From Lama glama (lineage: Eukaryota), in assembly GCA_028534125.1 (NCBI GenBank), contig CM052820.1, positions 3,968,001-4,032,000 on the forward strand: a stretch of DNA of 64,000 bases, given 5' to 3'. Both the position numbers and the translations under genes were made by a program. The notes beneath the pieces were generated by a model. The model searched no databases. It was not told the origin of the DNA and saw nothing but the letters and a program-made list of their open reading frames with translations. This document shows, piece by piece, positions 7,045 to 50,085 of this stretch (the stretch's first letter is position 1; each line of letters starts with the position of its first letter).

Positions 7045-7056
7045 CTGCATCCATGT
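7045..7056 (-). CDS. AGAP1: 12-nt microexon of AGAP1 (adds DMDA after ...EESPE)
   Basis: Minus strand reads ttccttctttttcttactggctgttccattctttgcAG|acatggatgcag|GTAACT. Long CU-rich tract, branch-like cttac and strong donor. Phase 1 gives G|AC ATG GAT GCA G with no stop. Confidence 0.75.
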
Positions 7057-7757: not shown

Positions 7758-7845
7758 CTTCGGGAGACTCCTCCTGGACGTACGTGCCGGTCAGATACCG
7801 GTGCACCAGGGCCGACTTGCCGCTGGCCAAGTTACCCACAATTCC
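7758..7845 (-). CDS. AGAP1: AGAP1 coding exon (88 nt; [29 protein letters not shown][G]; P-loop of GTPase-like domain; canonical exon 3)
   Basis: tttgttccAG|ggaatt...gaag|GTATGC, with Walker A motif GNLASGKS. The translation matches AGAP1. Phase 0 in, phase 1 out. Confidence 0.96.
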
Positions 7846-14029: not shown

Positions 14030-14088
14030 CACTTTGAGCTCCGGGACTGATCGACTTAACGTCCATTCCTGGCTATTCACAAAGGCAT
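14030..14088 (-). CDS. AGAP1: AGAP1 coding exon (59 nt; [D]AFVNSQEWTLSRSVPELKV; canonical exon 2)
   Basis: Minus strand reads cctgttttacAG|atgcctttgtgaatagccaggaatggacgttaagtcgatcagtcccggagctcaaagtg|GTGAGT. The translation matches AGAP1. Phase 1 in, phase 0 out. Confidence 0.96.
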
Positions 14089-34561: not shown

Positions 34562-34588
34562 CTGAAGTCAGCTTTCGAGGCAAGGACG
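34562..34588 (-). CDS. AGAP1: Candidate 27-nt frame-preserving microexon of AGAP1 (adds ASLPRKLTS)
   Basis: Minus strand reads ctttcttgacTGCtttctttAG|cgtccttgcctcgaaagctgacttcag|GTATGT. Branch-like cttgac, UGC motif, pyrimidine tract, strong CAG|GTATGT donor, multiple of 3, no stop in phase 1. No transcript evidence is available. Confidence 0.5.
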
Positions 34589-39435: not shown

Positions 39436-41803
39436 CCCTACAGACATTCACAGGGAAAGTGAGCTTTGGTTCCACTGCACCTGAATGTTACCTGACAGAA
39501 CTGCACCCTGAACTCAAGACCTCACTTAAACAGCACCTCAACTTTGAGTACTCCACGTCCTAGGAAGCGATTACATAAAACGTGGAAAGCAGATGATAGA
39601 CTGGGAAGACCTGAAGCCGTGGGGCTGCAGCCTTTACCTGTAATAGATACTGGCCTTACAAAAATCTTGAGAACACCGACATTTCAGGCATTTTAGCCAA
39701 AGGCAGGTGAAGGGGGTAGTTTTGCGATTACCTAGAACTTTAGAATAAAGGAAGGCCCTGGGGTTCAGACTGTGCCGTAACCTACCTTGTTATCACTCGG
39801 TTTTTCTCCACAACCCACGTTGTTACCGTTACGTCAGACACCAGACTAATTCCACCCTGACAAGGACCAGCCACAGGGGACAAACCAACCCAGTATTATT
39901 TTAATTATTGCTATTAGTATCATCACATACTGCCCTAGAGGGCAAAATTCCAATACACTTCACACCTTTACCATTCCAAATCCACCATCAATCCACCTGA
40001 CAGGAAACACCCAAACCCCAATGCTTTTAACCTGAATCAGCGATGACCACAGGGAACCACTCTCCTCCTAAGCAGCTCTGTGCCGTCTCCCTCTCCCGCT
40101 CTCTGAGCTGTATTTGTCCGGAACCCAGGCAGCTAATTACTATTTTCGACAAAGCCCATGAGAACAAAGATGCAAGCCTGCTATTACAGGAAGCACTGCT
40201 GCCTGCCTATCTGAACTTCCCCCGAATGCAAGTGACGGCAGCGGCCACTTCATACAAGCCCTGTATCTTAACAAAATAACGCACATTAGTTTTAAAAAAA
40301 TATTTTAAGAGCATATGAGAAGAGATGGAATAATGGTTGGAGTCAAGCACAGCGCCTTCTAAAGTAAGTATTCCAAGGCAGGTTAAAACAAGATGTGTGC
40401 AGCAAGTTAAACTAATTCACGCCAGGCAACAGAGAACGTTGTTACATCCTCATTAATGAACTCAGATTTTAAACACTATCTGCACATTCAACTGCTTTCT
40501 TTCAAATACTTTCTGTCCAATTCTGAGGATCAGTGGGGGCACACTGGAACATGACATCATCTGTCTTCAGTTTAACCTTTAAAGTACTTCAGTGAGGTCA
40601 GTGGTTTCTTTGTATTGGCTGGTTTTAACACACAGCTTTGGCAGTCGGTTCACCTGTAAGGTCCACTAAGGAGGCACTCACTCTCCAGGGCTGGTGAGTT
40701 AGCAGCTGAAAATCTTCAACTAAAAGCCCACACTGCGTGTTTCAACGGCCTTAATCTCTATCATCAGAGGAGTTTTGGTAACTAGCAGAAGGTGCAGTTA
40801 CTAACGGTTTTTCAGTGGTGAGCTAAGCGCACCTGGACAGTGTCTTTAGGCACCACCCCCCACCCCTCCCCGTGAGATGGGTGTAACCATCCAGCCCACT
40901 GCCTGCCCTGGCCGCTTTCCTTCAGGGTGATGCCCACGTGTGCAGAGAGAAGGGGTTTGTGTTTCAAGTTTCTGGAGAATTCTGAGCCCCAAGCAACTTC
41001 CAGAAGGTTAGCGGATATTACCACATCTGCCTCCAGAACTCCCTGCGAGGTGCCTGTTGGAGGGCACCAGAGAACAGAGATCCCAGGGCAGGCTGTGTGC
41101 CCTGTATGCCAGAACTCATCACTAGGAAGCAGAACCCGGTCCTAGGGGAGCTGCCACCACCCGACACCAGTGTGCAGGGAGGGCTATCTCTGACCACTGG
41201 GGTGAACCCTCTTTCTCAGGCGCTCAAAAGATGAGAGCAGCCAAATCAGCGGGGCCACATCCCAGCACTCACAGATGGCAGCGCCTACAGGGAGACCAGG
41301 CTTGGGGGGTGGGGGGAAGGGAATTAAGATGAGAAATTAACCAAGATGAATGTCCTTCTCCCAGCCAGGCAGCACCACCTGTGCAGCATCTTCAGGGGCC
41401 CAGCCCCGGCCCCTGCTGCAGCCCCCAGGTGTCACAGCCGGCAAGCACGCAGTGCAGCAGCAAGCTCAGGAGCATGCTGCGCCAGTACCTGCGGGAGAAA
41501 GCACCGCTTGGCAAGGTGATCTCTCCCTAGACAGGCTTCAGTGGCTGGGGTGACAGGCCCTGAAAGATACCCAGCACACACAGCTGGGAGCAGGGACAGT
41601 CAATCACTTCCAGACCTGCAGCACGACTGAGGGAAAAACCGCAGTACCGGAATTCGCATCCAGCACGGCCACTTGCCGACTGATGACCTGGTAGGGCGGG
41701 TCCTTTGGCTGCTCCCAAGTCCCAGCGCGCTCTGCCAGGCAGGCCGCCGCGGAGCCCGGCCGGTTCCCATCACCGCCCTCCCCTCTCCGGGCGCGCTGCC
41801 CAC

Positions 41804-42773
41804 CTCTGCGCGGAGACCCGTCGATGCTCTCGGCGCTGGACGAGTGCGCGTCGGCTGGGGCCCGACGCAGGCTGCTGAAGTAGCCGCGCGGACGCGAGGC
41901 GCCGCTCCGCGGGGAAGGACCGCCACCGGGCGCGCCATCCCTGCGCGCGAAAATGCCGCTGAAGAAGCGCAGCAGCCGGTGCTCCGACGCCGCGCCAGGG
42001 CCCGCGGCCGCCGCCCGCGCGCGCTCCAGCCGCTGCAGGTCGCTGTTGTCCAGCGTGCGGTTCTTGCTTTTGCTGCGCTCCCAGCGCTCGAGGTCCGAGA
42101 GCCCATCGTTCTTGCTGAGCACCTCGCCCACGTCCAGGGTGTTGCGCTTCTCTGAGGCGGGTTGCGCGGAGGCCGCGGGCTCCAGGGCGGCCCCGAGGTC
42201 AGCCACAGCCTCGCCGCCCGGCGCCCAAGCCAGGCTCCCGGAGCTGCTATGGCGCCTCCCGCGGCCCAGAGACCGGTCCCGCGGCGCCTCTGGTCCGCTC
42301 CAGTGCCTGAAGCTAAGGCTCCGCCGCAAGGGCGCGGCCCGGACCCCCTCCACGTCGGGGCTGCCGGACGCGGGCGAGCCAGGCCCCTCCTCCCCAGCCG
42401 CGGGGCTGCCGGCCAGGTCCGCGGGCTCCGGGCCGCGTGCGCAAGGCCGGAGCCGCCCGAGCTCCAGCTGCCCGGTGCTGCGGGTGCGGAAGGTGCGGAA
42501 GTCCCAGGCGCGCGGCTGGAGGCCCTCCGAATCCTCCGCGTCCGCCGCCTCCTCGGCCTCCTCCACGAGCCGCCCGGGCGCGTCCGGGGAGCGCGCGGGC
42601 CGGGGCCTCCGAGCCTGTCGAGGGTCGGGACCGCCAGGACCCGGCGCGCCCAGCTGCTCCTTCCTAACCATGGTCACGGAGATGCGGTAGACGGTCCTCC
42701 TGGGGGGCGTACCGCGCGGCATCGCGTCCGCGGGCGGAGACGCGGGTTCGCCGCTGCCGTCCAGCAGGTACAT
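41804..42773 (-). CDS. AGAP1: Alternative first coding exon of AGAP1 (long, PIKE-L-like N-terminus, 323 aa: MYLLDGSGEPASPPADAMPRGTPPRRTVYRISVTMVRKE...SIDGSPRR)
   Basis: ATG at 42773 (ggcgacATGt) and a second in-frame ATG at 42722. The frame is stop-free within the CpG island. Donor AGAG|GTGGGC at 41804/41803 is phase 1, so G+AT from exon 14030-14088 gives GAT (Asp) in frame. Motifs RRTVYRISVTMVRKE, KSKNRTLDNSDL and RLLRFFSGIF match the AGAP2/PIKE-L N-terminus as recalled. Confidence 0.85.
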
Positions 42774-43270
42774 GTCGCCCGGGGCCGCGGCCGCCGCGCC
42801 GCCCGCCAGGGCTCCGCTGCATCCGCGGGCCGGGCCGCACGATCGGGGCGGGCGCCGGGCGAGGCGGGGAGGGCGGGAGCGCCCGGAGTGGGCCCACGCC
42901 CCCCGCTCTCCGCGAAGGCTGCGCTCAGGCTGCGGGGACGGCGCCCCTGGCGCCCGCCGGCCCGTGCGCCGTGCGGCCCGAGTGCGGGGGTCCGGGCCCG
43001 GGGCGCCGAGCCATGGGCCGACGGGGCCGAGTGGGCGGAGCGGCGGGCGGGCAGTCAGGCGTGGGGACGGTCTCGCCGGCAGGTGCGGTCGCGGCGCGCA
43101 GGGCCCGGGGCGGGCGGCGGCGCCCGCGGCTTCATTGTCTACGGCGCGGACTCCGCTCGCATCCTCGGGCCTTTTTTGCACAGTTCGGCGGCTCCGCAGC
43201 CTTCGCCACTCCCTGGATTCGGGACGCGCGGGCAGCTGCGCCGGCCGCGGGCTGGGGGCGGGCGGGCGGC

Positions 43271-43316
43271 GGTTTAAAATGGAAATGCGCGCCGGGGCGG
43301 GGCGGGGGCCGACGTG
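43271..43316 (-). promoter_or_regulatory. Putative core promoter: tandem GC boxes (GGGGCGGGGCGGGG) next to a TTTAAA AT-rich element
   Basis: ggtttaaaatgg at 43271-43282 is an isolated AT patch in the island. Sp/KLF boxes at ~43294-43308 lie upstream of it on the minus strand. A TSS near 43245 is inferred, not shown. Confidence 0.4.
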
Positions 43317-44130
43317 CAGGGACCGCGGGCCGCGCGCCCAGCCTGGCCGCCGAGTCCCGGGAGCGCGGCGGCGGCGGCGGCGGGCGCGCGGCTCCGCGGC
43401 TCCGCGGACAGGCCTAAGCGCCGGGGTGGATCGCCAACGCACGAACCGGAGCCTCCGTAGGATGGGCGGTGGGGGCTTGCGCCCCGCCTGAACCGACACT
43501 CTGGAGCTTGGCTTGCAAAAGTGAACAAAATATGCGTCGTCTCTGACCCGCTAAGGGTTTATATGAAGCATCTCTCCTAATCAAGGAGCTCTGAAGAATA
43601 TGCAACCCAAGCGACCTGTTTTAAAAAGCAAGGTACCTTTGGTACTTGTTGTCCTAACTTTACAAGAGGAGCAAGTGCACTCCCAGGAAGGAGAGAACAA
43701 AGACTGGGGAGGCAGCATCGCCGTAATGGCGGTCCTGTTCACACCAGTGCCCTCCGAATGAAGGATTGTGCAGCTTCACTCCTAGTACACTATTTTGGAG
43801 TCTTTCTGCAACGTGTGTGGGAAAACTCCTGACAGACAGGCATTTGCTGCCCGAGATGCAAGCGGGAGAAGACAATGGTTAAGAGAAAAAAGAAGGCTGG
43901 CCTCTCCCAGACCTGCATATCCACTTGCCAGAGGGCTCAGTTTTTACACCTGTAAAGTGGGGGTGGACACCACAAACAGCACCTAAACTCTGAGCATTCT
44001 TGTAGGACTGAACTCGTTCAGAGACTATAGGCAGGCATTCTGCGTGCTAAATACCATTAATATTTAATGTTGATTTCTCTTCCATCATATTTTCCCACTT
44101 GCTATACCTCTTGGCTCTACAGATACTCGT

Positions 44131-49450: not shown

Positions 49451-50085
49451 TAAAATTAACTCAAAACAGACTTATCATATGATTCAGCAGTCTCACTCCT
49501 GGGCATATATATATGTGGAGGAAACTCTAATTCAAAAANNNNNNNNNNNNNNNNNNNNNNNNNNNNNNNNNNNNNNNNNNNNNNNNNNNNNNNNNNNNNN
49601 NNNNNNNNNNNNNNNNNNNNNNNNNNNNNNNNNNNNNNNNNNNNNNNNNNNNNNNNNNNNNNNNNNNNNNNNNNNNNNNNNNNNNATAATGCTATTTAAG
49701 CTACATGGATAGACCTAGAGATTATTGTATTAGGTGAAGTAAGTCTGACAGAGAAAGACAAAGTGAAATAAATTTCACATATTTGTGGAATCTTAAAAAA
49801 TGACACAAATAAACTTATTTACAAAATGGAAACAGACTTGTAGACATAGAAAACAAACTTATGGTTATCGGAGGGAAAGGGAGTTCGGGATTTGAAGATA
49901 CTACTATATATAAAACAGGTAAACAACAAGGTCCTACTGTAAAGCACAGGGAACTATATTCAATATCTTGTAGTAACGTATAATGAAAAAGAATATATAT
50001 ATATATGTATGTATGTGTGTGTAACTGAATCACTATACTGTATACCAGCATTGTAAATCAACTAAACTTCAATTAAAAAACAAAA
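49451..50085 (+). mobile_element. Artiodactyl-type L1 3' fragment (end of ORF2 plus 3' UTR), interrupted by a sequence gap
   Basis: catatgattcagcagtctcactcctgggcatata, gacctagagattatt...gtgaagtaagtc, aacaaggtcctactgtaaagcacagggaactatattcaata, ending in cattgtaaatcaactaaacttcaattaaaaaa. Confidence 0.88.
49539..49685. other. Assembly gap (147 N)
   Basis: Run of N inside the L1 fragment. Confidence 0.99.

What the first reader, a model, noticed from the sequence alone, without database searches (positions are those of the whole stretch)
41804..42773. A hidden 'PIKE-L-like' long isoform of AGAP1 from an internal CpG-island promoter
Seen: a 323-codon frame in an intronic CpG island ends at a phase-1 donor that joins exon 14030-14088 in frame (...SIDGSPRR|DAFVNSQEW...). 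Recalled knowledge: the paralog AGAP2 makes a brain isoform, PIKE-L, from an alternative first exon joining the homologous exon (...ASP|KAVINSQEW). Three blocks match in the same order across low-complexity sequence: RRTVYRISVTMVRKE vs RRTTTYLISLTLVKLE, KSKNRTLDNSDL vs KGKSKTLDNSDL, and HRLLRFFSGIF vs RKMLKFISGIF. Inference: the two-promoter, two-N-terminus design predates the AGAP1/AGAP2 duplication, and AGAP1 may have a counterpart of the PI3K-enhancer isoform. The exon may exist in automated annotations, but I know of no functional characterisation of it or of these motifs.
Basis: partly seen in the sequence, partly recalled or inferred. Interest (0 to 1): 0.85.

Follow-up and report, generated by a model that had tools for sequence, protein, structure and literature searches.

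The report
Long-isoform first exon of AGAP1
This is a real alternative first coding exon of the AGAP1 gene, conserved from fish to mammals, that gives the protein a long and mostly disordered front end; gene-prediction databases already list it for dozens of species, but nobody seems to have studied what it does.

Summary
On the minus strand an ATG at 42773 opens 323 codons that end at a phase-1 G|GT donor after 41804. The exon lies in a CpG island (about 41500-43500). It joins exon 14088-14030 in frame (...SPRR|DAFVNSQEW).

It is not hidden. The window is camelid. The exon is 99.1% identical to RefSeq "AGAP1 isoform X2 [Vicugna pacos]" and 98.5-98.8% identical to the Camelus isoforms. The same N-terminus with the same junction is predicted in dozens of mammals, in chicken and in many fishes. 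Frame conservation stops at the ATG and at the donor.

The N-terminus is a fast-evolving, mostly disordered region with about nine strongly conserved short blocks.

Homology to AGAP2's PIKE-L is likely but was not shown with a tool. No AGAP2 sequence could be fetched, and a library-wide phmmer search returned only AGAP1-type proteins. Indirect support:
- AGAP2 has the same layout, with its long-isoform first exon downstream and in a CpG island.
- AGAP1 long isoforms carry the counterpart of the "PIKE-L-exclusive" PH-domain insert.

A PI3K-enhancer role is unsupported: no PxxP motif is conserved.

I found no paper on this isoform.

The parts
41500..43500 (.). CpG island holding the alternative first exon and, presumably, its promoter
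   Evidence: GC 0.69-0.81 and CpG observed/expected 0.9-1.15, against 0.41-0.49 and 0.3-0.5 in the flanks. Promoter activity is inferred; no start-site data were obtained.
42774..43240 (-). Putative 5' UTR; its upstream end is unknown
   Evidence: No codon periodicity here (GC1/2/3 = 0.82/0.79/0.83). Outside camelids the frame is not kept beyond about 35 codons upstream of the ATG. Four upstream ATGs (43162, 43135, 43014, 42822) are all out of frame; the last opens a 52-codon ORF that overlaps the main ATG. A TATA-like TTTTAAA between GC boxes lies within the 43230-43300 stretch printed, near 43270 by my reading of the ruler. The transcription start was not determined.
41804..42773 (-). Alternative first coding exon of AGAP1 ('exon 1L'): 323 codons plus 1 base, phase-1 end
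   Evidence: Sequence and translation. It is 99.1% identical to the N-terminus of RefSeq AGAP1 isoform X2 of Vicugna pacos (P0428) and 98.5-98.8% identical to the Camelus isoforms. Orthologues reach teleosts.
41802..41803 (-). GT splice donor of exon 1L
   Evidence: CAGAG|GTGGGCAG. Read-through ORFs of other mammals all continue ...SPR[RK]GG[QHR]R, which fits a conserved G|GT. After that they lose a common frame.
42656..42700 (-). Conserved block 1 (residues 25-39, RRTVYRISVTMVRKE; family consensus RKTVYRISLTLVKKE)
   Evidence: 11 of its 15 columns hold one residue in at least 90% of 129 sequences; T27-I31, T34 and V36 are invariant. The surrounding residues 21-40 have pLDDT about 75 in the N-terminus-only model.
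42036..42071 (-). Conserved block KSKNRTLDNSDL (residues 235-246)
   Evidence: TLDNSD is invariant in 129 sequences. It is followed by a predicted helix at 243-255 with pLDDT 77-88.
41949..41981 (-). Conserved block HRLLRFFSGIF (residues 265-275)
   Evidence: L267 and R269-F275 are at least 90% conserved. Predicted helix at 262-274.
14030..14088 (-). AGAP1 exon 2 (59 nt), shared acceptor for the long and canonical first exons
   Evidence: Acceptor ttttacag|ATGCC; the frame reads (D)AFVNSQEWTLSRSVPELKV|gtgagt. The same junction is present in P0428, P0433, P0160, P0167 and P0168.
7758..7845 (-). AGAP1 exon 3 (start of the GTPase-like domain)
   Evidence: ttccag|GGAATT...GAAG|gtatgc encodes [29 protein letters not shown] plus 1 base.

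Best explanation
Window 41804-42773 (minus strand) is an alternative first coding exon of AGAP1. It sits in its own CpG island about 27.7 kb upstream of exon 2.

Transcripts that start here splice from the phase-1 donor after 41804 to exon 14088-14030. They encode an AGAP1 protein of about 1,020-1,160 residues. In it, a 323-residue N-terminal extension takes the place of the short canonical N-terminus, and the GTPase-like, PH, ArfGAP and ankyrin core is unchanged.

The extension is largely disordered and evolves fast, but it carries about nine short blocks conserved from teleosts to mammals:
- MYLLD
- RKTVYRIS(L/V)T(L/M)VKKE
- FRTFSTGQLELGRL
- PLRRSFSFRHWSG
- HSSSG
- TLxVGxVLxK
- RWERxxxKNRTLDNSDL
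- RLxRFFSGIFxRRDG
- SSxESxxG

The most likely mode of action is that it works as a string of short docking and phosphorylation motifs that retarget or regulate the same ArfGAP core.

Shown here: the exon, its frame, the junction, conservation, the exon boundaries, and its presence in automated annotation.

Inferred: use of the CpG island as a promoter, tissue pattern, and binding partners. My motif readings are unvalidated: RSxSxR in the RRSFSF block as a 14-3-3-type or basophilic-kinase site, and [RK]x[VL][RK]F as a PP1-type RVxF site.

The extension is probably the paralogue of the PIKE-L N-terminus of AGAP2 (about 0.8). This rests on indirect evidence only.
For: Sequence anatomy. CpG island. 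Codon periodicity is confined to the exon.

Homologues: 40 were found in a search of 1.84 billion proteins, 17 of them below 1e-30, and all are AGAP1-type.

Full-length predicted AGAP1 proteins with this N-terminus and the same SPR[RK]|DAFVNSQEW junction:
- mink UniRef A0A8C7AIL7, lemming CAO2625387.1 and chicken XP_015144747.1
- RefSeq X-isoforms of mustelids, bears, seals, cats, whales, pig, camels, alpaca and rhinoceros, plus a UniRef entry for a colobus monkey
- cichlids, groupers, salmonids and other fishes

Identity to the alpaca isoform is 99.1%.

Conservation: 127 distinct N-termini have no stop or frameshift, and 236 of 243 begin with an MYLLD-type start (M[YFH][LP][LFIV][DENG]).

Exon boundaries:
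- Read-through ORFs lose their common frame within about 14 codons after the donor, even between the window and camel, while the 969-nt exon has no indel between these two.
- Upstream of the ATG the frame is not kept outside camelids.

Evolutionary rate: the N-terminus is 83-92% identical among mammalian orders against 94-98% for the rest of the protein. For chicken the figures are 57% and 95%; for fishes, 42-46% and 86-88%.

Structure: the N-terminus-only AlphaFold2 model has mean pLDDT 53.5. Local order appears only at conserved blocks.

Transcription: RNA-labelled runs of 206-939 million letters from three studies hold 0.65-0.68 of the exon's sampled words in assembled contigs. That is too little sequence to assemble a single-copy locus from contaminating genomic DNA (my inference).

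PIKE-L link:
Random placement reaches this 17 times in 100,000.
- In AGAP2 the PIKE-L first exon lies downstream of the short isoform's first exon, in a CpG island (PMC7073092).
- AGAP1 long isoforms carry AKRKAWKLNRVGSLRNIY. This is the counterpart of [20 protein letters not shown], which that paper calls exclusive to PIKE-L.
Against:
- The RefSeq X-isoforms are predictions. I could not check their transcript support.
- Published Western blots describe only 89 and 93 kDa AGAP1 in brain (PMC5031601), with no band of the size expected for the long form.
- No AGAP2 protein reached E <= 0.001 in the library-wide search.
They agree with mine but were not checked with a tool.
- All the partner proposals are motif readings of degenerate patterns.
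Confidence: 0.92

Rival explanations
1. The exon is an independent small gene nested in an AGAP1 intron. It would encode a stand-alone protein of about 330-390 aa that ends at the stop 67 codons past the 'donor', rather than forming part of AGAP1.
For: Some annotations treat it this way: rat 'uncharacterized protein Agap1l1' XP_006228997.1 (255 aa), and uncharacterized LOC entries in Pteropus medius, Caretta caretta, Pogoniulus and Ascaphus. Many assembled contigs carry the read-through ORF.
Against: - The read-through tails share no frame or sequence beyond GG[QHR]R, even between camelids, so the tail is not under coding constraint.
- The phase-1 end and the exact junction to DAFVNSQEW recur in full-length models from fishes to mammals.
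- Two of the 'separate gene' models (Ascaphus P0216, Platysternon P0212) themselves continue into AGAP1 exon 2 and beyond, so they are truncated AGAP1 models.
Confidence: 0.04
2. The frame is a chance open reading frame in a very GC-rich promoter or CpG island. Any transcripts would be non-coding or would use a downstream start.
For: Stop codons are rare at 75-80% GC. Three ORFs of 239-371 aa lie on the other strand of the same island, and this frame stays open for 631 codons, well beyond the exon. 1.2% of shuffles stay open.
Against: - Orthologues with the same start, the same order of blocks and the same phase-1 end span more than 400 million years (my figure, from general knowledge).
- Invariant blocks such as TLDNSD are present in 129 of 129 sequences.
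- Codon periodicity is confined to the exon.
Confidence: 0.01
3. The exon is a genuine AGAP1 long-isoform exon, but its likeness to PIKE-L is not common descent of a two-promoter design. The few shared short motifs would be convergent or over-read, and the AGAP1 extension would be an AGAP1-specific acquisition.
For: - A phmmer search of 1.84 billion proteins with the exon returned only AGAP1-type proteins at E <= 0.001.
- Every one of the roughly 460 related proteins in hand is AGAP1-type ([18 protein letters not shown]).
- The proline-rich character that defines the PIKE-L extension is not conserved in AGAP1.
- The PIKE-L strings are recalled, not fetched.
Against: - The three matched blocks are among the most constrained parts of the AGAP1 family, and they occur in the same order.
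- The fish/family consensus (..YRISLTLVK..) is closer to the quoted PIKE-L block than the mammalian sequence is (compared by eye).
- AGAP2 has the same exon order and a CpG island at the long-isoform exon (PMC7073092).
- A second PIKE-L-specific element, the PH-domain insert, has a clear AGAP1 counterpart.
Confidence: 0.15

Closest known systems
Predicted long isoforms of AGAP1 in RefSeq and Ensembl/UniRef (for example AGAP1 isoform X2 of Vicugna pacos, isoforms X1-X7 of Camelus ferus, chicken XP_015144747.1, mink A0A8C7AIL7)
   Same: Same gene, same first exon, same start (MYLLD) and same junction (SPRR|DAFVNSQEW). Identity is 99.1% to the alpaca isoform and 98.5-98.8% to the camel isoforms over the 323 residues.
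   Different: Nothing of substance: 3 substitutions against alpaca and 4-5 against camels. These database entries are computational predictions with no described function.
PIKE-L, the long brain isoform of AGAP2 (AGAP2 isoform 1)
   Same: - It is a long N-terminal extension encoded by an alternative first exon that lies downstream of the short isoform's first exon, in a CpG island (PMC7073092).
- AGAP1 long isoforms also have the counterpart of the PIKE-L-only PH-domain insert.
   Different: - It is a different gene.
- Outside the blocks there is no detectable similarity: no AGAP2 hit at E <= 0.001.
- AGAP1's extension has further conserved blocks (FRTFSTGQLELGRL, PLRRSFSFRHWSG) that I could not compare with PIKE-L.
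- The proline-rich, SH3/PI3K-binding character reported for PIKE-L (PMC9818964, PMC7073092) is not conserved in AGAP1.
- No binding or PI3K data exist for AGAP1-long.
Canonical AGAP1 (the 89 and 93 kDa isoforms described in brain and cell lines)
   Same: From exon 2 onward the protein is the same: GTPase-like domain, split PH, ArfGAP and ankyrin repeats. The same optional 53-residue PH-loop insert is present.
   Different: The first exon and promoter differ. The canonical first exon is not in this window. Published work describes only the two shorter forms (PMC5031601).
Rat 'Agap1l1' (XP_006228997.1) and similar 'uncharacterized LOC' entries
   Same: They cover the same exon sequence (72% identity over 61% of the query for the rat entry).
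   Different: They are annotated as separate genes. Here they are read as truncated or split models of the AGAP1 long isoform.

Membership tests
AGAP1 long isoform (alternative first coding exon) | Open frame from a conserved start to a GT donor whose phase fits AGAP1 exon 2 | tested here: met
   ATG at 42773, 323 codons, G|GT after 41804. G+AT gives D, followed by AFVNSQEW at 14088.
AGAP1 long isoform (alternative first coding exon) | Orthologous proteins carry the same N-terminus fused to the AGAP1 core at the same junction | tested here: met
   P0428, P0433, P0160, P0167, P0168 and P0013 have it, as do more than 200 others. The core is AGAP1-type throughout ([22 protein letters not shown]1 C-terminus).
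AGAP1 long isoform (alternative first coding exon) | Coding constraint limited to the exon | tested here: met
   127 distinct N-termini have no stop or frameshift. The frame is lost just after the donor and upstream of the ATG. GC3 exceeds GC2 only inside the exon. dN/dS was not computed because no orthologous DNA was available.
AGAP1 long isoform (alternative first coding exon) | Spliced transcripts in this organism (junction reads, mapped start site) | not testable with these tools
The only other evidence is that RNA-labelled runs hold the exon's words in contigs.
PIKE-L-type N-terminal extension (AGAP2 isoform 1) | Alternative first exon in a CpG island, downstream of the short isoform's first exon | tested here: inconclusive
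   The CpG island is confirmed. The canonical first exon is absent between this exon and exon 2, and from the rest of the window. That fits an upstream position, but its location was not seen. The AGAP2 layout is taken from PMC7073092.
PIKE-L-type N-terminal extension (AGAP2 isoform 1) | Significant sequence similarity to the PIKE-L N-terminus | tested here: inconclusive
No AGAP2 protein was among the hits at E <= 0.001, and no AGAP2 sequence could be fetched.
PIKE-L-type N-terminal extension (AGAP2 isoform 1) | Proline-rich domain with SH3-type PxxP motifs (the reported PI3K-binding part) | tested here: not met
   Proline is 10.8% here but 3.3-13.9% across the family (median 5.7%). None of the window's five PxxP motifs has both prolines present in at least 50% of 127 N-termini.
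PIKE-L-type N-terminal extension (AGAP2 isoform 1) | Accompanying PH-domain insert ([20 protein letters not shown] in PIKE-L, PMC7073092) | tested here: met
   An optional cassette AKRKAWKLNRVGSLRNIYSSSSTNTE is present in camel, pig, cat, seal, chicken and salmonid long isoforms, 22 of 235 full-length proteins in hand. It lies outside this window.
PIKE-L-type N-terminal extension (AGAP2 isoform 1) | Binding to and enhancement of PI3K; binding to 4.1N, Homer and PLC-gamma1; brain-restricted expression | not testable with these tools
   These need experiments. No paper on the AGAP1 long form was found.

The most novel reading that the evidence does not exclude
The long N-termini of AGAP1 and AGAP2 (PIKE-L) descend from a single extension that was present before the vertebrate genome duplications. 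Their shared functional core would then be the three or more short blocks kept in both (the ..Y.IS.T.VK.. segment, K..TLDNSDL, and [RK]x[VL][RK]F.SGIF), not the proline-rich stretches studied in PIKE-L. These blocks would recruit a common partner still to be identified, for example a phosphatase-1-type or 14-3-3-type partner, or 4.1N. AGAP1-long would be a neglected neuronal isoform of a gene linked to neurodevelopmental disorders.
Probability: 0.25. Interest if true: 0.55.

Novelty: already known. Interest (0 to 1): 0.3.

Why it matters
AGAP1 is studied as an endosomal ArfGAP and as a candidate gene for neurodevelopmental disorders. The papers I could search consider only the 89 and 93 kDa forms.

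A second promoter and a 323-residue N-terminus conserved from fishes to mammals have several practical consequences:
- Constructs, antibodies, knock-outs aimed at the canonical first exon, and variant interpretation may all miss an isoform.
- Variants in this CpG-island exon would be read as intronic against the canonical transcript.
- If the PIKE-L paralogy holds, the blocks shared by the two proteins point to the parts of PIKE-L's N-terminus that are under long-term constraint.

The exon itself is not a discovery, because annotation pipelines already predict it widely.

Tried and rejected
- Pfam scan of the exon: no family at E <= 1.
- PDB sequence searches with the exon and with the family profile: nothing at E <= 10.
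- ESM Atlas with the exon and with the coelacanth N-terminus: only non-specific hits at 0.82 or below. The Atlas's own model of the coelacanth protein has pLDDT 0.42.
- Full-length AlphaFold2 model of the alpaca isoform from 40 sequences: mean pLDDT 38, and even the known domains are poor, so it was not used.
Later queries used window:41856-42773 or database proteins.
  - Local scripts still read the window file for local alignment and counting.
I therefore obtained no orthologous DNA, no dN/dS, and no check of whether contiguous fish ORFs (P0033, P0018) come from cDNA contigs.
- Fetching an AGAP2/PIKE-L sequence: not possible. The scan's notes hold nothing on AGAP2.
The exons were handled by reference, and database proteins stood in for the spliced product.
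- No contig that I took for human was met, saved or compared.
- Literature searches for 'Agap1l1', 'AGAP1 long isoform' and the peptide TLDNSDL: no papers.
- No complex prediction was run, because I make no binding claim.
Full report
**What is in the sequence**

On the minus strand an ATG at 42773 opens a frame of 323 sense codons (MYLLDGSGEP...AESIDGSPRR). One further base (G, 41804) precedes a GT at 41803-41802, in the context CAGAG|GTGGGCAG.

About 27.7 kb downstream, exon 14088-14030 lies behind a strong acceptor (ccctcctgttttacag|ATGCC). The split codon G+AT gives D, and the frame continues AFVNSQEWTLSRSVPELKV before a gtgagt donor. Exon 3 (7845-7758) continues [29 protein letters not shown]. 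These are the start of the AGAP1 GTPase-like domain.

The exon lies in a CpG island of about 2 kb (roughly 41500-43500). GC there is 0.69-0.81 and CpG observed/expected is 0.9-1.15; the flanks have 0.41-0.49 and 0.3-0.5.

**Is it more than a chance frame?**

Length alone is not convincing at this GC content. The same frame stays open for 631 codons, three ORFs of 239-371 aa lie on the opposite strand, and 1.2% of mononucleotide shuffles of the exon have no stop.

Three other lines settle it.

1. Codon-position composition is periodic only inside the exon. GC1/2/3 is 0.74/0.66/0.88 there and 0.82/0.79/0.83 upstream.
2. A phmmer search of the exon against 1.84 billion representative proteins gave 40 hits at E <= 0.001, 17 of them below 1e-30. 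All have the same start, the same ordered blocks and, where they extend far enough, the same continuation into DAFVNSQEW and the AGAP1 GTPase-like domain.
3. The exon boundaries are visible in cross-species comparison.
   - Contig ORFs of other mammals that read through the donor all continue GG[QHR]R. This fits a conserved G|GT.
   - These ORFs then lose any common frame. Between the window and camel this happens within about 14 codons, although the two have no indel in the 969-nt exon.
   - Upstream of the ATG, frame and similarity are kept only within camelids. Other mammals share only a short stretch next to the ATG.

**Whose genome, and is the exon 'hidden'?**

The exon is 99.1% identical (3 substitutions) to the N-terminus of RefSeq 'AGAP1 isoform X2 [Vicugna pacos]' (P0428, 1073 aa). 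It is 98.5-98.8% identical to isoforms X1-X7 of Camelus ferus, C. bactrianus and C. dromedarius. In all of these SPRR is followed directly by DAFVNSQEW. The window is therefore camelid.

The same long N-terminus is predicted in:
- RefSeq entries for mustelids, bears, seals, cats, baleen and toothed whales, pig, warthog and rhinoceros;
- UniRef entries for mink, pig, cat, lion, lynx, peccary, narwhal and a colobus monkey;
- chicken XP_015144747.1 and lemming CAO2625387.1;
- a long list of teleosts, and coelacanth and sturgeon fragments.

In a few species the exon is annotated as a separate gene: rat 'Agap1l1' XP_006228997.1, and uncharacterized LOC entries in Pteropus, Caretta, Pogoniulus and Ascaphus. 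Two such models run on into AGAP1 exon 2 themselves. I read these entries as split or truncated AGAP1 models.

The isoform is thus widely present in automated annotation.

**Anatomy of the extension**

I aligned 127 distinct N-termini and, separately, 129 N-terminal fragments (A2). Both show a fast-evolving region with short, strongly conserved blocks:

| Block | Residues |
|---|---|
| MYLLD | 1-5 |
| G.P.RKTVYRIS(L/V)T(L/M)VKKE | 20-39 |
| FRTFSTGQLELGRL | 93-108 |
| PLRRSFSFRHWSG | 148-160 |
| HSSSG | 175-179 |
| TLxVGxVLxK | 212-221 |
| RWERxxxKNRTLDNSDL | 230-246 |
| RLxRFFSGIFxRRDG | 266-280 |
| SSxESxxG | 312-319 |

Identity of the N-terminus compared with the rest of the protein:

| Comparison | N-terminus | Rest of protein |
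|---|---|---|
| Among mammalian orders | 83-92% | 94-98% |
| Chicken | 57% | 95% |
| Fishes | 42-46% | 86-88% |

An AlphaFold2 model of the first 306 residues, built with 129 sequences, is mostly low-confidence (mean pLDDT 53.5, pTM 0.19). Local order appears only at conserved blocks:
- residues 21-40, pLDDT about 75;
- helices 223-234, 243-255 (pLDDT 77-88) and 262-274.

There is no Pfam family, PDB relative or informative Atlas neighbour. This is the signature of a disordered region carrying short linear motifs.

My motif readings are hypotheses from degenerate patterns. RSxSxR within RRSFSFRHW could be a 14-3-3-type or basophilic-kinase site, and [RK]x[VL][RK]F in RLxRFF could be a PP1-type docking motif.

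**Relation to PIKE-L**

I could not obtain any AGAP2 sequence. The one exhaustive search returned only AGAP1-type proteins. The three word-indexed searches were filled by AGAP1 relatives.

The absence of AGAP2 at E <= 0.001 shows that similarity outside the short blocks is weak.

Four indirect observations favour true paralogy.

1. They hold 29 of 38 residues in columns at least 90% conserved, against 72 of 306 overall. Random placement of three blocks of the same lengths reaches this 17 times in 100,000.
2. The family consensus of block 1 (..YRISLTLVK..) is closer to the quoted PIKE-L string than the mammalian sequence is, as expected for divergence from a common ancestor. This comparison is by eye, and the PIKE-L string is not tool-verified.
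3. A review of AGAP2 states that only the first exon differs between the isoforms, that the AGAP2 first exon lies upstream of the PIKE-L first exon, and that the PIKE-L exon region is a CpG island (PMC7073092). The layout here is the same as far as the window shows.
4. The same review quotes [20 protein letters not shown] as a PH-domain insert exclusive to PIKE-L. Camel, pig, cat, seal, chicken and salmonid AGAP1 long isoforms carry an optional cassette AKRKAWKLNRVGSLRNIY... at the equivalent place.

I put the paralogy at about 0.8.

The functional inference is weaker. PIKE-L's extension is described as a proline-rich domain that binds PI3K (PMC9818964; PMC7073092). In AGAP1, proline content is lineage-specific (10.8% here, 3-6% in fishes) and none of the window's five PxxP motifs is conserved. 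What the two proteins appear to share is a different set of motifs.

**Expression**

The look-up of sequencing runs reported that RNA-labelled runs from three studies (206-939 million letters each) hold 0.65-0.68 of the exon's sampled words in assembled contigs. Four runs of another organism label hold 0.96-1.00.

The constant share fits a sister species about 1% diverged. The small run sizes argue against genomic contamination as the source. Both points are my inference.

I therefore have no junction reads, no start site and no tissue pattern.

**Literature**

I found no paper in the searchable library on an AGAP1 long isoform, an internal AGAP1 promoter or 'Agap1l1'. Work on AGAP1 in neurons reports two forms of 89 and 93 kDa (PMC5031601).

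**Verdict**

The core reading, a long AGAP1 isoform from an alternative first exon in a CpG island, is right with high confidence.

It is already known to annotation pipelines, in the nearest species and across vertebrates, so it is not a hidden exon. What remains open is modest but real: an uncharacterised, deeply conserved N-terminus, its probable common origin with PIKE-L, and the function of the shared motifs. The suggested PI3K-enhancer role has no support in the conserved features.

Noticed in passing
window 7045-7056 (minus strand): A 12-nt microexon (ttctttgcag|ACATGGATGCAG|gtaact) inserts DMDA after ...EESPE. It is present in RefSeq Camelus ferus AGAP1 isoforms (SPE-DMDA-GGRFKKE). A related ADVDA form is the majority state in fish long isoforms. 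111 of 242 proteins in hand carry an insert at this point.
   Followed up: partly
window 34562-34588 (minus strand): This is the 27-nt candidate microexon noted by the scan (ASLPRKLTS). Its phase would fit between exon 1L and exon 2. None of the roughly 460 AGAP1-long proteins fetched here contains SLPRKL, and all camelid isoforms join SPRR directly to DAFVNSQEW.
   Followed up: partly
outside the window (AGAP1 PH-domain region; proteins P0431, P0433, P0434, P0168, P0414, P0424): An optional 26-residue cassette AKRKAWKLNRVGSLRNIYSSSSTNTE is conserved from salmonids to mammals. It is the AGAP1 counterpart of the insert that PMC7073092 calls exclusive to PIKE-L.
   Followed up: partly
window 42822 and 43014-43162 (minus strand): Four upstream ATGs lie in the putative 5' UTR, all out of frame with the main ATG. 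The one at 42822 opens a 52-codon ORF that overlaps the main start (main ATG context GGCGACATGT). If the transcript starts upstream of them, they could damp translation.
   Followed up: no
within window 43230-43300 (minus strand), near 43270: An AT-rich TATA-like element (CATTTCCATTTTAAACC) is flanked by GC boxes inside the otherwise roughly 80% GC island, about 0.5 kb upstream of the ATG. It is a possible core promoter element; this was not tested.
   Followed up: no
window 49539-49685: A run of 147 N lies upstream of the island.
   Followed up: no
database entries P0370 (Leptonychotes weddellii) and P0133 (Osmerus mordax): Two partial proteins with the AGAP1-type long N-terminus and AGAP1-type GTPase-like domain are named 'AGAP2-like' by their source. 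The likely reason is that only AGAP2 has a curated long form to be named after.
   Followed up: no
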